DNA of 63,951 nucleotides, filler included, from Octopus bimaculoides (lineage: Eukaryota), in NCBI RefSeq assembly GCF_001194135.2. It is 7 parts of 6 records of this genome, joined end to end, with 100 filler letters (N's around TTAATTAATTAA, not from the genome) between each part and the next. Parts side by side here need not be neighbours in the genome. Positions count along the whole stretch, not along the records: positions 23,431 to 39,040 come from NC_068982.1; 6 more parts are not named here. One strand, given 5' to 3'. This document shows positions 24,186-37,687 of the stretch, piece after piece. Position 1 is the stretch's first letter. Each line of letters starts with the position of its first letter. The notes below the pieces were generated by a model. The model was not told where the DNA came from. It did no database searches and saw only the letters and a program-made list of their open reading frames with translations. The translations under genes and the position numbers were made by a program.

Positions 24186-24457
24186 AAAGAAACCAACAAA
24201 AGCAATGCAATCGAATCAACGAGGGGACTTTCTAGGCAGCCGTTCGAAGTGCTAAAAATAGTAACTAAATTTTCCTCAGATCACAGTCTGCCATCTGAAA
24301 AAAAAAACGGTTGAAAAAATCCACGTTTGATAATATATTAGTTTCAGGGAAAAGAACAAAGTGGCCAAGACTGGAACGCCTATCATCATAAACTAAACAA
24401 CAACAACAACAACAAAAACAAATAATAATAATAATGATGATAATAATAATGATAATA

Positions 24458-24931
24458 ATAACGTGGCTATGTAGTAAGAAGATTGCTTCCCAGCCACATG
24501 GTTCCAGTTTCAGTCCCACTGCGTGGTATGTTGGGCAAGTGCCTCACTACTTCTGCTCATGATCAGAGATGCACATATCGTCAGCCACCAAAGGACATGC
24601 TCAACTGGTTGAGGTCAAACAACTGACAAGCAAATCTGTGGTATTGAGCAGAATATTTGATGTCGCCCGTCCTTTATACCAAAACAAAACAATGTACATG
24701 ATAACACTTCCAATTAAGATCAGAAGCCTGGTACTGCATCTGGGCATATAACATGGCTATGTAGTAAGAAGATTGCTTCCCAGCCACATGGTTTCGGTTT
24801 CAGTCCCACTGCGTGGTATGTTGGGTAAGTGCTTTCTACTATCATCTCGAGTCAACTAAAGCCTTGTGAGTGGATTTGGTAGTCAGAAACTGAAAGAAGC
24901 CCGTCGTGTGTGTGTGTGTGTGTGTGTGTGA

Positions 24932-24970
<39 letters not shown>

Positions 24971-25200
24971 CATATGTTTGTATTTATATCTATGTATGTG
25001 TGTGTCTTTGTGTCTGTGTTTGTCACCTACTATTGCTTGACAAGCGGTGTTGGTCTGTTTACGTTCGGTTCGGCAAAAAGAGACCGATAAAATAAATACC
25101 AGGCTTAAAAAAAATTGTACTGGGGCCGATTCATTCGACTAAAAGTTCTTCAAGGTGGTGCTCCAGCATGGCTGCAGTCTAACGCCTGAAACGAGTAAAA
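24458..25200 (+). mobile_element. SINE-A with a duplicated head and a foreign insert of about 200 bp (24545-24747)
   Basis: The head segment occurs at 24458-24544 and again at 24748-24834; the body and tail follow to about 25200. Confidence 0.85.
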
Positions 25201-25477
25201 GAAACTACAAAAACAATGCTGATAGTAACAACATAAGAGCAACATTCGGAACAATAAAAGTGAATTTTCCCATCACTGAATTACCTAATACAGCCATCCC
25301 CAATGCTACCATGAAAACCACCGACAGGAGAGGTTCTATGTAGTAGCTCATCCTATTAAAACTAGCAAGCAAATCTCCGTCAATTTACTTCCTAGAAATG
25401 ATCTTAAAGTCGTGTGTAGTTTATGCTTAATTATATGTTCTTACATACATTTCTTAAATATAAGTTAATTATAAAAC

Positions 25478-25598
25478 GTAGGAGTGGCAGTGTTGTAAGT
25501 AGCTTGCTTACGAACCACATGGTTCTGGGTTCAGTCCCACTGCATGGCACCTTGGCCAAGTGTCTTCTATAGTCTCGGGCCGACCAAAGAAGCCTATC

Positions 25599-25674
<76 letters not shown>

Positions 25675-25898
25675 GTGTGTGTATGTGTTTGTGTGTCTGT
25701 GTTTGTCCCCCCAACATCGCTTGACAACCGATGCTGGTGTGTTTACGTCCCCGTAATCTAGCGGTTCGGCAAAAGAGACCGATAGAATAAGTACTAGGCT
25801 TACAAAGAATAAGTCCTGGGGGTCGATTTGCTCGACTAAAGGTGGTGCTCCAGCATGGCCACAGTCAAATGACTGAAACAAATAAAAGAGTAAAAGAG
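25478..25898 (+). mobile_element. SINE-A, full length
   Basis: Head, ccttggccaagtgtcttctatag, internal (TA)n(TG)n, and tail ...aaaagagtaaaagag. Confidence 0.92.
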
Positions 25899-26006
25899 TA
25901 TTGGTTACATATTACAATTACGTAAACCAAACTTGCTATTAAATCGTCAGACGTCCAACCATTAAGCCTAATATTGCTGGAAAGAACATGTGATAATAAT
26001 AGAAGC

Positions 26007-26060
<54 letters not shown>

Positions 26061-26321
26061 NNNNNNNNNNAGAGAGAGAGAGCCACGAGTTTAAAGCCTT
26101 GTATCATAGGCCTGCCTAATCTGGGCTGGCCTAGGTTTGAACAGCCACAACGACGACAACGAGACAGCTTCTACGCAGTCGTTCAAATAGCAGCCATTCA
26201 TTCGCCAAGTGATGACACAGTACGCTTAATGGAGATAAGTGATGTTGGATAAATACAATATATATATGAAAAAGGAATTGGTTGGTCATGGTTAGAACAT
26301 CTTTTGAATGATAACTGACCT

Positions 26322-26435
26322 GGCCATATCACGCTGAGAGCACCGGTTCTCGTCCGATCACCGAAGTTAAGCAACGTCGTGCCTAGTGAGTACTTAGATG
26401 GCTGACCGCTTGGGAAACCTAGGTGCTGTAAGCAT
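26322..26435 (+). pseudogene. 5S rRNA: 5S rRNA retrocopy lacking the first ~6 nt
   Basis: ggccatatcacgctgagagcaccggttctcgtccgatcaccgaagttaagcaacgtcgtgcctagtgagtacttagatggctgaccgcttgggaaacctaggtgctgtaagcat is a metazoan 5S with Box A and Box C. The 5' GCTTAC needed to pair with the 3' gtaagc is absent, and there is no T-run terminator. Confidence 0.93.
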
Positions 26436-26440
26436 CCAAC

Positions 26441-26506
26441 ACTTTAAAGGCGGTGCTCCAGCATGGCCGCAGTCAAATGACTGAAACAAGTAAAAGAGTA
26501 GAAGAG
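26441..26506 (+). mobile_element. SINE-A 3' tail fused to the 5S copy
   Basis: taaaggcggtgctccagcatggccgcagtcaaatgactgaaacaagtaaaagagtagaagag is nearly identical to the tails at 25838-25898 and (inverse) about 42895-42950. Confidence 0.9.
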
Positions 26507-27852
26507 AAACAATATCAAGCAGAAGAACAATTTCAACAACGAATATTATGCCACCTCACTACCAAGGACAATTAGGAGGGAGAGAGAGAGGGGAGAGATA
26601 GAGAGGAGGGCGGTAAAGAAAGGGATGGAGATATATGTAAAGGGAGAGAGAGGAAGAAAGAGAGAGGAAGAGAGAGAAGAGAGAGAGAGGGAGAGAGAGA
26701 GGGAGAAAGGGAGAAAAAAGAGAGTGAGAGAGAATGAGAGAGTAAGAGAGAGAAGTGAGGAGAGAGACAGAGACATAAAAGGAGAAAGAGATGGAGATAT
26801 ATGTAGAGAGAGAGAGAGAGAGAGAGAGAGATATTTTCTTTTCCCACTAGTATCAACGTCTCAAATGAAGCTATGAACATTTGCATCACATGAAATAATC
26901 GGTCACCACCACCACCACCACCACTACAGCCATTACTATTACTACTTCTGCTGCTGCTGCTACTACTACTACTACTACTACCACTACTACTACTACTACT
27001 GCTGCTATTGCGGCTGCCGCTGCCACCACCACTACTAACTAACACTAAGAACAACCTCAGAGGCAATAACCAGACAACAATCATTAAATTCCTTTGAAAA
27101 AGAACCCCCCCCCCCCCATCACTACAAACACCAATCTGTCCTTCCGACAAAAACTTCAGCCGCCGAAATAACAACCACGATCATTATCACTATCGTCATC
27201 GCATCACCAAGAGAAGAGGAAAATGCTGTAACAACACGAACAAGGACAAGAACAACAAGAACAACAATAACTACTACATAACGAAGAATAAGAACAACAA
27301 TAATGACAAGAAGAACAACATCATCGGTCACATAACAAGCGTAATATAACATTAGAAATGAAACAGCTCGTAAGAAACACGTAAGCAAAATAAGAAAAAA
27401 GAAAAAAGGAATGAATTGAATTAAATACAACAACAACAACAAAAAAAAAAGAAGTTAGCAAAACATGGAAAAAAATTAATAGTAAAACCACAACAACAGT
27501 AATAACAAGAGATAATTAAATTGCAACAACTACAAGAAAAAAGCCAACGGCGAGAAAATAAACGTGATTAAATTTCTTTTTACAGCAGAATTTACAGTAG
27601 ATGTTATCGCCATGAGAGAGAAAACTCGATGCGGGAGATTTAATGACACCAGCTGGGAATCGAACTCAAGCCCACCTGCAGTCACTGGAAAAAGAAAAAG
27701 AAAACTATAGAAGAAAAGAAAAACAATTCTTTTTTTTTGTAATTATATCGCGTTTCTTAAGTAGTGTTATCAAACTGTTCATGAACAGGAAAACATGAGG
27801 ACTACAATAAGAATAATAGGAAAAAACACAACATAACACACTCAAACACACG

Positions 27853-30597: not shown

Positions 30598-31825
30598 TTT
30601 CTCTCCCCCCCTCTCTCCCTCTCCCTCTCTTTATTCGCCTGTATTCTACGCTTTCTTTTTTATGTCCTCAGTTTATTATTTGACTTTCTATCTTGCACTT
30701 TAGTCATTCGATGAGATCATCCATCATATAACGCCCAGCAAACAACAGACATGCGAACCATTATATACGTATGTATGTATGTATGTATGTATGTATGTAT
30801 GTATGTATGCAGGTGTGCAGGTATGTATATGTATGTATCTATGCATGTATGTATGCATATGCATCTTTGCATGCATGCATGTATGTATGTGTAATATATA
30901 TATGCATATATATACATATATATATATACATATACATATACATATATATATATACATATATATATANNNNNNNNNNNNNNNNNNNNNNNNNNNNNNNNNN
31001 NNNNNNNNNNNNNNNNNNNNNNNNNNNNNNNNNNNNNNNNNNNNNNNNNNNNNNNNNNNNNNNNNNNNNNNNNNNNNNNNNNNNNNNNNNNNNNNNNNNN
31101 NNNNNNNNNNNNNNNNNNNNNNNNNNNNNNNNNNNNNNNNNNNNNNNNNNNNNNNNNNNNNNNNNNNNNNNNNNNNNNNNNNNNNNNNNNNNNNNNNNNN
31201 NNNNNNNNNNNNNNNNNNNNNNNNNNNNNNNNNNNNNNNNNNNNNNNNNNNNNNNNNNNNNNNNNNNNNNNNNNNNNNNNNNNNNNNNNNNNNNNNNNNN
31301 NNNNNNNNNNNNNNNNNNNNNNNNNNNNNNNNNNNNNNNNNNNNNNNNNNNNNNNNNNNNNNNNNNNNNNNNNNNNNNNNNNNNNNNNNNNNNNNNNNNN
31401 NNNNNNNNNNNNNNNNNNNNNNNNNNNNNNNNNNNNNNNNNNNNNNNNNNNNNNNNNNNNNNNNNNNNNNNNNNNNNNNNNNNNNNNNNNNNNNNNNNNN
31501 NNNNNNNNNNNNNNNNNNNNNNNNNNNNNNNNNNNNNNNNNNNNNNNNNNNNNNNNNNNNNNNNNNNNNNNNNNNNNNNNNNNNNNNNNNNNNNNNNNNN
31601 NNNNNNNNNNNNNNNNNNNNNNNNNNNNNNNNNNNNNNNNNNNNNNNNNNNNNNNNNNNNNNNNNNNNNNNNNNNNNNNNNNNNNNNNNNNNNNNNNNNN
31701 NNNNNNNNNNNNNNNNNNNNNNNNNNNNNNNNNNNNNNNNNNNNNNNNTATATATATTCGTATATGTGTATATATATATACATGAATATATGTAAGATAC
31801 ACTCTTATATATATATATATATGTA

Positions 31826-36732: not shown

Positions 36733-36951
36733 AGAGTGGGTGTGTGGTAAAAAGCAAGGCACAGGCGTGAGGGTGTGGTAAGAAGGTAAACGCAGGCGTG
36801 GCTGTGTGGTAAGAAACTTGCTACACAACGACATGGTTCCGGGTTCAGTCCCATTCCGTTGCACCTTGGGCAAGTGTCTTCTACTGTAGCCTCGGGCCGA
36901 CTAAAGCCTTATGAGTGGGTTTGGTAAACGGAAGCTGAAAGAAGCTTGTCG

Positions 36952-36986
<35 letters not shown>

Positions 36987-37210
36987 GTGTGTGTCTTTAT
37001 GTCTGTGTTTGTTCCTCCACCATCGCTTGACAACCGGTGTTGGTGTGTTTATGTCCCCGTAACTTAGAGGTTCGGCAAAAGAGACCGACAGAATAAGTAC
37101 TAGGCTTACAAAGAATAAGTCCCGGGGTCAATTTCTTCGACTAAAACTCATTAGGGCGGTGCTCCAGCTTGGCCGCAGTTATATGACTGAAACAAGTAAA
37201 AGAATAAAAG
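36733..37210 (+). mobile_element. SINE-A, full length, preceded by two extra 5' head stubs
   Basis: gtgggtgtgtggtaaaaag / gcacaggcgtgagggtgtggtaagaag / gcaggcgtggctgtgtggtaagaaac, followed by a complete element. Confidence 0.9.
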
Positions 37211-37687
37211 CACATACAATAAATTAGGAATCCCTGTCAACAACAGAAAAAGCAAACACACACAACAGCAACTGATATATTAACAGGAATATTTTGAATT
37301 CTATATTGTTAGTAAGTTAATAGTAAAATTAATGACGTTGAAGCTGATGTCGAAAAAGCAGCTGTATAGTTCATTGGCAGAGGAATTATATTTCAAATTG
37401 AGACGAATTTTAATAAAGGAACATAAAGGCGACTGAATTTAAGCAAGTAGACATCATAAAACCTTGCTTTGACAACGTCGGAGCTCATTTAACAAAACTC
37501 CCATACTGAAAATCATAATCTGGTAAGTAAAGAAAACAAAAATATTGAGACGGACATTTAGAAACTATGAAAGCCAAAAATGACGCAAACAATCAGATAA
37601 GCAATATACAGAAAATTTAAGCGAAAAACAATACTTAGACACAGATAAAATGATTGAGGAAACGAAAGAGAGGTGGAGAGGGAGAGG

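What the first reader, a model, noticed from the sequence alone, without database searches (positions are those of the whole stretch)
26322..26506. 5S rRNA head fused to a tRNA-SINE tail: candidate 5S-derived SINE (SINE3) or template-switch chimera
Seen: a nearly complete 5S with its internal Pol III boxes, no terminator, and about 65 nt of SINE-A 3' tail joined within about 5 nt. Known: SINE3 elements use a 5S head with a LINE-recognised tail, and U6/5S-LINE chimeras arise by reverse-transcriptase template switching. If the junction recurs, this is a 5S-headed SINE family sharing SINE-A's mobilising LINE. I do not recall one being described in cephalopods.
Basis: partly seen in the sequence, partly recalled or inferred. 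Interest (0 to 1): 0.72.

Follow-up and report, generated by a model that had tools for sequence, protein, structure and literature searches.

The report
Octopus 5S-headed SINE-like retrocopy
A 5S ribosomal-RNA copy with no terminator is fused to the 3' tail of the common octopus tRNA/CORE SINE. It looks like a 5S-headed SINE, a well-known kind of element, but I could not test here whether it belongs to a family or is a one-off chimera.

Summary
Window 26314-26434 (+) is a full-length 5S rRNA match (Rfam RF00001, 84.7 bits, model 1-120). No T-run follows it. At most 7 unexplained bases later come about 65 nt (26441-26506) that match the consensus 3' tail of the abundant Octopus tRNA/CORE SINE. 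Three copies of that SINE lie in the piece, and 12 lie in 120 kb of O. bimaculoides and O. sinensis.

The tail is young: both CpGs are intact and it differs from the consensus at 1 of 62 positions. It also keeps a short segment that the young tRNA-SINE copies have lost. Its source was therefore probably not a young tRNA-SINE RNA.

The decisive test is whether the junction recurs genome-wide. No second 5S copy was found in about 136 kb.

The literature makes a family likely. Repeat tables already list "SINE/5S" classes in O. bimaculoides and O. vulgaris (9.8 Mb, 4 families), and about 24,000 5S-derived loci in giant squid. The same head swap is known as HaSE3/HaSE1 and CoeSINE5/CoeSINE4.

Verdict: probably a member of an undescribed 5S-SINE family (about 0.6). 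This would be a new member of a known kind, of modest interest.

The parts
26314..26434 (+). 5S rRNA-derived head. It is full length by the covariance model, but the first 6-8 nt are non-canonical.
   Evidence: Rfam RF00001, 84.7 bits, model 1-120. There are four non-canonical pairs, two in helix I and two in helix II. CpG observed/expected is 8/8.7.
26365..26412 (+). Internal Pol III type-1 promoter region: box A-like at about 26365-26379, IE-like at about 26382-26387, box C-like at about 26395-26412.
   Evidence: Located by eye against the Xenopus 5S control region, recalled from memory: 11/15, 5/6 and 14/18 matches. This stretch is also the best-conserved part of the Rfam alignment. Promoter activity was not tested.
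26434..26440 (+). Junction or linker, ATCCAAC, where the 5S terminator T-run should be.
   Evidence: No T4 run is present. The linker aligns weakly with the CGAC/CAAC that precedes the tail in tRNA-SINE copies. Its origin is not settled.
26441..26506 (+). LINE-type 3' tail shared with the Octopus tRNA/CORE SINE. It has two predicted hairpins (26449-26468 and 26470-26483) and ends in GTAAAAGA-like 8-mer repeats (26490-26506).
   Evidence: It matches the 16-tail consensus except for one base. It is 100% identical over 54 nt to L001:3798-3851. RNA fold z-scores are -2.1 and -3.5 in the two youngest copies. There is no covariation support.
25474..25898 (+). Comparator: full tRNA/CORE SINE copy ('SINE-A') with an internal (TA)n(TG)n run and the same tail.
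36788..37212 (+). Comparator: full tRNA/CORE SINE copy, long-variant junction before the tail.
24743..25211 (+). Comparator: older tRNA/CORE SINE copy, long-variant junction before the tail.

Best explanation
The element is most likely a young retrocopy of a compact, roughly 190-nt 5S-headed SINE (SINE3 type) of Octopus.

**Proposed mechanism.**
- The 5S part supplies an internal type-1 Pol III promoter (box A, IE, box C).
- The 5S terminator is missing, so transcription would run on through the attached tail.
- The tail has two small hairpins followed by GTAAAAGA-like repeats. It is the same tail carried by the dominant Octopus tRNA/CORE SINE.
- That tail would be recognised by the reverse transcriptase of the same, still unidentified, stringent-type LINE (RTE- or CR1/L2-like). 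The LINE would then copy the RNA into the genome by target-primed reverse transcription.

**Shown here:** the 5S identity, the absence of a terminator, the tail identity, and the youth of the copy.

**Inferred:** Pol III transcription, recognition by the LINE, and membership of a multi-copy family.
For: - Full-length 5S match, with the promoter region the best-conserved part.
- No T4 run between head and tail.
- The tail equals the consensus of 16 tails from three sources, differing at 1 of 62 positions. Both CpGs are intact, whereas neighbouring tRNA-SINE tails have lost them. So this is a recent copy of something close to an active master.
- Before the tail it keeps ACTTTAAAGG. This aligns with a segment present in old, diverged tRNA-SINE copies and deleted in the young ones. 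That argues against a recent young tRNA-SINE RNA as template and for a separate master or the LINE itself.
- The flanks are not repeated in 120 kb of Octopus DNA; only the tail is.
- Literature on cephalopods: the SINE class '5S' covers 9.83 Mb in 4 families in O. vulgaris (PMC13282606). SINE/5S is 0.030% and SINE/5S-Core-RTE 0.021% of repeat copies in O. bimaculoides (PMC8967140). About 24,000 5S-derived loci in giant squid are 'likely SINEs' (PMC6962438).
- The same head swap on a shared tail is established elsewhere: HaSE3/HaSE1 (PMC3272025) and CoeSINE5/CoeSINE4 (PMC5786205). SINE3 families are said to have arisen independently several times (PMC10886601).
Against: - I found no second copy of the junction, or of any 5S-like sequence, in the 15.6-kb piece or in 120 kb of O. 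bimaculoides plus O. sinensis. All 15 other tails sit on tRNA-SINE bodies.
- There is no convincing target-site duplication; the best is an exact 6-mer. The full tRNA-SINE copies lack one too.
- The first 6-8 nt of the head are not canonical 5S. That fits 5' truncation or a diverged master equally well.
- The published '5S' classes are automated labels with no sequences given. I cannot show that any of them has this junction.
- Type-1 promoters are thought to depend on upstream signals, which makes retroposed 5S heads poor promoters (PMC3272025).
Confidence: 0.6

Rival explanations
1. A one-off chimeric retrocopy. A LINE reverse transcriptase began on the 3' end of its own RNA, or of a SINE RNA. 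After about 70 nt it switched template to a 5S rRNA molecule and copied it almost to its 5' end, as in U6/5S-L1 chimeras in mammals. No family followed.
For: - The order (small RNA at the 5' end, LINE/SINE tail at the 3' end) and the junction at the natural 3' end of 5S are what template switching gives. The mechanism is cited in PMC4824008 and PMC3272025.
- The head may be 5' truncated by 6-8 nt.
- No second copy was seen in about 136 kb.
Against: - Genome tables already report 5S-class SINEs in Octopus, on the order of thousands of copies in O. bimaculoides and megabases in O. vulgaris. A randomly met 5S-plus-tail element is therefore far more likely to come from such a family.
- The head has two broken helix-II pairs. 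A fresh copy of functional 5S rRNA should not have these, given that the tail shows almost no decay.
- No 3' U residues of 5S are present at the junction.
Confidence: 0.22
2. Two independent events. A dispersed 5S pseudogene was already there, and a severely 5'-truncated SINE or LINE copy later inserted right behind it. Alternatively, a deletion brought the two together.
For: - tRNA-SINE tails are dense here: 4 in 15.6 kb, and about 6 per 60 kb elsewhere.
- No target-site duplication brackets the whole unit.
Against: - It needs an insertion in the same orientation within about 7 nt of the exact 5S 3' end, together with loss of the terminator.
- None of the 15 other tails is a tail-only fragment.
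- The segment ACTTTAAAGG is not what a young tRNA-SINE copy would bring, yet the tail is young.
Confidence: 0.1
3. An assembly artefact: a false join of a 5S read path and a SINE tail in a short-read scaffold.
For: - The piece is a gap-rich draft with 8% N, and a 10-N gap lies 250 nt upstream at 26061-26070.
- Both parts are repeats.
Against: - There is no gap between 26071 and 30966.
- 5S and the SINE share no sequence at the junction that could mislead an assembler.
Confidence: 0.05

Closest known systems
HaSE3 / HaSE1 of Helicoverpa armigera (PMC3272025)
   Same: A 5S-headed SINE and a tRNA-headed SINE in one genome share their 3' end (94% between consensuses). That end comes from one partner LINE (HaRTE1). 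The origin proposed is a template switch from the tRNA-SINE RNA to 5S rRNA. The 5S form is much rarer than the tRNA form.
   Different: HaSE3 shares the body as well as the tail with HaSE1. Here only about 65-72 nt are shared and there is no body. The partner LINE is not identified, and a family has not been shown.
CoeSINE5 / CoeSINE4 of coelacanth (PMC5786205)
   Same: A 5S head and a tRNA head sit on the same LINE-derived 3' part.
   Different: Those elements carry both 5'-UTR and 3'-UTR pieces of RTE and are established multi-copy families.
SINE3 of zebrafish and the Deu-type 5S SINEs such as AmnSINE1 (Kapitonov and Jurka 2003; Nishihara 2006; both cited)
   Same: A 5S-derived head with box A, IE and box C, no internal terminator, and a LINE-recognised tail.
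   Different: Those elements have a body or a Deu domain and are 300-600 nt long. This one is about 190 nt with the head joined almost directly to the tail.
U6/5S-LINE chimeric retrogenes of mammals (Buzdin 2003, cited)
   Same: The same order of parts, and the junction lies at the 3' end of the small RNA.
   Different: Those are single-copy, L1-driven, end in poly(A) and have target-site duplications. Here the tail is a stringent-type tail with no poly(A), and no duplication is visible.
'SINE/5S' and 'SINE/5S-Core-RTE' classes in Octopus repeat tables (PMC8967140, PMC13282606)
   Same: Same genus, same head type; the second class also has a CORE-SINE relationship.
   Different: Only class labels and totals are published. 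No consensus is available to compare, and this copy has no CORE domain.

Membership tests
SINE3 (5S rRNA-derived SINE) | Head derived from 5S rRNA that keeps the box A / IE / box C region | tested here: met
   Rfam 5S_rRNA, 84.7 bits, model 1-120. The promoter-region motifs are present by eye (using a reference recalled from memory).
SINE3 (5S rRNA-derived SINE) | No Pol III terminator between head and the rest of the element | tested here: met
   No run of 4 or more T between 26306 and 26833.
SINE3 (5S rRNA-derived SINE) | 3' tail shared with a partner LINE, or with a co-mobilised SINE | tested here: inconclusive
   The tail is shared with 15 tRNA/CORE SINE copies. No LINE carrying this tail was available to compare.
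SINE3 (5S rRNA-derived SINE) | Many dispersed copies with the same head-tail junction and different flanks | not testable with these tools
No further copies were found in 15.6 kb plus 120 kb. At the published densities, about 0.1 (O. bimaculoides) to 2 (O. vulgaris) copies would be expected in that much sequence, so this result is uninformative.
SINE3 (5S rRNA-derived SINE) | Target-site duplication | tested here: inconclusive
   The best flanking repeat is an exact 6-mer 20 nt away from each end. The full tRNA-SINE copies nearby have none either.
SINE3 (5S rRNA-derived SINE) | Pol III transcription | not testable with these tools
   No RNA data could be reached.
Template-switch chimeric retrocopy (small RNA + LINE/SINE 3' end) | Small RNA complete up to its natural 3' end, joined to a 5'-truncated LINE/SINE 3' part | tested here: met
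   The 5S sequence runs to model position 120, and tail homology begins 7-12 nt later.
Template-switch chimeric retrocopy (small RNA + LINE/SINE 3' end) | Single locus | not testable with these tools
   Same limits as above.
Functional 5S rRNA gene | Intact helices, a terminator T-run right after the 3' end, and a tandem array | tested here: not met
   Four non-canonical pairs, including the 5' end of helix I. No T-run follows. Only one 5S is present in the piece.
CORE-SINE (for the comparator 'SINE-A') | tRNA-like head followed by the CORE domain (…CCTTGGGCAAGT…GCCTC.G…) | tested here: inconclusive
   The copies carry CACCTTGGGCAAGTGTCTTCTACT.TAGCCTCGGG. This resembles the MIR CORE as I recall it. 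tRNA-Core is the largest repeat class in O. bimaculoides at 30.9%. ARAGORN and Rfam call no tRNA.

The most novel reading that the evidence does not exclude
An independent and recent birth of a minimal, body-less 5S-headed SINE in octopods. It would have taken its tail from the partner LINE (or from an old SINE lineage) rather than from the currently dominant CORE-SINE, and it may still be active. Octopus would then offer a natural pair: a type-1 and a type-2 Pol III head on one and the same LINE tail, in one genome. That pair could be used to measure how head type sets SINE success.
Probability: 0.3. Interest if true: 0.4.

Novelty: new member of a known kind. Interest (0 to 1): 0.25.

Why it matters
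If the junction recurs, this would be the first characterised 5S-headed SINE of octopods. So far such elements appear only as class labels in repeat tables. It would also mean that the LINE driving the large octopus SINE expansion mobilises elements with two different promoter types. That is useful for repeat libraries and for dating LINE activity, and it adds one more example of repeated SINE3 births. It would not change how SINEs are understood. If the junction is unique, the element is an ordinary chimeric retrocopy.

Tried and rejected
- **Read-level tests.** I then tried read laying once, using O. bimaculoides RNA-seq run accessions printed in the supplement of PMC8967140. I did not pursue this further.
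- **Junction pattern in metagenome contigs.** No hits. A tail-only control in metagenome, prokaryote-genome and viral collections also gave none. These collections therefore hold no octopus DNA and the negative result means nothing.
- **Protein-index detour.** The minus-frame ORF across the junction found no candidate (one search was rejected as too short).
- **Six-frame SINE query.** A concatenated six-frame translation of the tRNA-SINE found three proteins with SINE-derived exons, two of them named as O. bimaculoides models. This ties the SINE to Octopus. None of the three is in the contig index.
- **Window ORFs.** They are not on record either.
- **Fetched Octopus loci.** The VPS51 orthologues gave two 60-kb loci, one from O. 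bimaculoides and one from O. sinensis. They contain no 5S-like sequence by Rfam, blastn or nhmmer. They contain 12 tails, all on tRNA-SINE bodies.
- **Target-site duplications.** Nothing convincing for this element or for the full SINE copies.
- **Covariation in the two tail hairpins across 16 copies.** No better than shuffles. The hairpins remain a prediction only.
- **Printed sequences in the paper library.** None found.
- **Albertin 2015.** Not held.
- **tRNA calls on the SINE heads.** ARAGORN and Rfam give none.

Full report
**What is there.**
Rfam finds one family above its gathering score in the 15.6-kb piece. It is a 5S rRNA match at 26314-26434 on the + strand: 84.7 bits against a threshold of 38, covering model positions 1-120 without truncation. 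A permissive scan adds nothing except microsatellite noise.

The alignment is clean from 26322 onward. The first eight bases (ACTGACCT) fit only with a 2-nt insertion and two non-canonical helix-I pairs. Two further helix-II pairs are also broken. The part that corresponds to the internal control region of 5S genes, roughly 26365-26412, is well kept. For that comparison the reference was recalled from memory, so the box coordinates are approximate.

The head shows no CpG depletion: 8 observed against 8.7 expected.

**What follows the head.**
A 5S gene ends in a run of T. Here ...GCTGTAAGC is followed by ATCCAAC ACTTTAAAGG CGGTGCTCC... The next run of four T lies at 26834.

From 26445 to 26506 the sequence is 94% identical to the 3' end of a tRNA-type SINE at 25474-25898. 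It is 85% and 77% identical to the ends of two more copies, at 36788-37212 and 24743-25211. A 26-nt probe of this tail hits four times in the window, against none in 100 shuffles.

**What the comparator SINE is.**
The copies have a tRNA-like head, a stretch that resembles the CORE domain (my recollection of the MIR core), an internal (TA)n(TG)n run, a body and the tail.

A concatenated six-frame translation of these copies found three proteins containing SINE-derived peptides, two of them named as Octopus bimaculoides models. The same tail occurs 5-6 times in 60 kb of O. bimaculoides chromosome CM046614.1 and about 7 times in the orthologous 60 kb of O. sinensis. One O. bimaculoides copy matches the window's tail 54/54.

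This fits the published picture. tRNA-Core and tRNA-Deu SINEs are the largest repeat classes of Octopus (PMC8967140).

**How young the element is, and where its tail came from.**
In an alignment of 16 tails, the 5S-linked tail equals the majority consensus except for one base in the terminal repeat. It keeps both CpGs, which copies A3 and A2 have lost. It is therefore a recent copy of something close to an active master.

Just upstream of the shared tail, the young tRNA-SINE copies read CGACTAAA-AAGG. The older, more diverged copies have an extra 6-8 nt there (for example CTTC, TCTTTT, CCTTCG). The 5S element reads ACTTTAAAGG, which aligns with that extra segment.

This is a short stretch and the argument is modest. 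It does suggest that the tail was not copied from a young tRNA-SINE RNA. The source would then be either the partner LINE or a separate master lineage. If so, the unexplained linker shrinks to about 7 nt, or to about 2 nt if CCAAC is taken as the CGAC/CAAC that precedes the tail in the SINE.

**The tail as a recognition signal.**
In the two youngest copies the tail folds into two small hairpins followed by A-rich GTAAAAGA-like repeats, with z-scores of -2.1 and -3.5. This is the general shape of tails of stringent-type LINEs, according to established knowledge of L2/CR1/RTE partners. The 16 copies give no covariation support, which is expected for decaying copies of a single master. The hairpins therefore remain a prediction. 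No LINE was available for comparison.

**Family or single event.**
This is the question that matters, and I could not answer it directly.
- The metagenome, prokaryote-genome and viral collections contain neither the junction nor even the very abundant tail, so they hold no octopus DNA.
- Protein-index detours gave nothing for the junction.
- The only Octopus DNA I could fetch was two orthologous 60-kb loci around VPS51. It has no 5S-like sequence by Rfam, blastn or nhmmer, and its 12 tails all sit on tRNA-SINE bodies.

At the published densities one would expect only about 0.1 copies in that much O. bimaculoides sequence, and up to about 2 at the O. vulgaris density. The negative result is therefore uninformative.

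There is no convincing target-site duplication. The neighbouring full-length SINE copies have none either.

**What the literature adds.**
- Table S2 of PMC8967140 lists SINE/5S at 0.030% and SINE/5S-Core-RTE at 0.021% of repeat copies in O. bimaculoides, and SINE/5S at 0.039% in O. vulgaris. It lists much more in the giant squid, where 5S-Deu-L2 reaches 1.18%. With 3.6-10 million repeat copies per genome, that is on the order of a thousand or more copies.
- The 2026 O. vulgaris annotation lists a SINE class '5S' with 4 consensus families covering 9.83 Mb. One of those families has recent insertions (PMC13282606).
- The giant squid paper reports about 24,000 5S-derived loci, 'likely SINEs' (PMC6962438).
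- None of these papers gives sequences, and none characterises the elements, so I cannot show that any listed family has this junction.

They do, however, make a family the more probable source of a randomly met 5S-plus-tail element.

**Comparison with known systems.**
A 5S head on a tail shared with a tRNA SINE of the same genome is established. Examples are HaSE3/HaSE1 in Helicoverpa, which share an RTE-derived 3' end and are explained by a template switch to 5S rRNA (PMC3272025), and CoeSINE5/CoeSINE4 in coelacanth (PMC5786205). SINE3 families are said to have arisen independently several times (PMC10886601).

This element differs mainly in being very short, about 190 nt with no body. It also differs in that its family status is unproven.

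**Verdict.**
| Reading | Probability |
|---|---|
| Member of an undescribed Octopus 5S-SINE family | about 0.6 |
| One-off template-switch chimera | about 0.2 |
| Two adjacent independent events | about 0.1 |
| Assembly artefact | about 0.05 |

In every case this is a known kind of element, and interest is modest.

Noticed in passing
window 24453-24560 and 24743-24850: Two tRNA-SINE heads about 95% identical to each other lie 290 nt apart in direct orientation. They are only about 70% identical to the other heads. The first is cut off after about 100 nt and is followed by unrelated sequence with a different hairpin-bearing tail-like stretch (…AAAGGACATGCTCAACTGGTTGAGGTCAAACAACTGACAAGC…). This could be a local duplication or a second SINE type.
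   Followed up: partly
window 36740-36817: The first roughly 23 nt of the SINE head (GGCGTG…GTGTGGTAAGAA) are partly repeated two or three times just upstream of the copy at 36788-37212.
   Followed up: no
window 24905-25010, 25596-25700, 36955-36995: Every full tRNA/CORE SINE copy carries a (TA)n/(TG)n microsatellite at the same internal position, between the CORE-like part and the body. The SINE therefore seeds dinucleotide repeats.
   Followed up: no
P0002 (UniRef A0A0L8… O. bimaculoides VPS51 model) versus P0005 (NCBI model): The older gene model contains a SINE-derived peptide (…FDCGHAGVPHRPFSRANLPQDLFFVSLVLILLVSFAKPLGYGDVNTPALVVK…) and is only 84% identical to the NCBI (GCA_001194135.2) model. 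This looks like an annotation artefact from an exonised SINE.
   Followed up: partly
L001:59465-59533 (-): A mir-252 precursor match above the gathering score (50.2 bits against 45) lies about 9 kb downstream of VPS51 in O. bimaculoides.
   Followed up: no
window 30927-31794: The '434-nt perfect palindrome' reported by the repeat finder (I1) is an artefact of a 782-N gap at 30967-31748.
   Followed up: yes
window 26003-26090: AGCCACGAG occurs on both sides of a (GA)n run that contains a 10-N gap. The gap probably sits inside a collapsed microsatellite.
   Followed up: no
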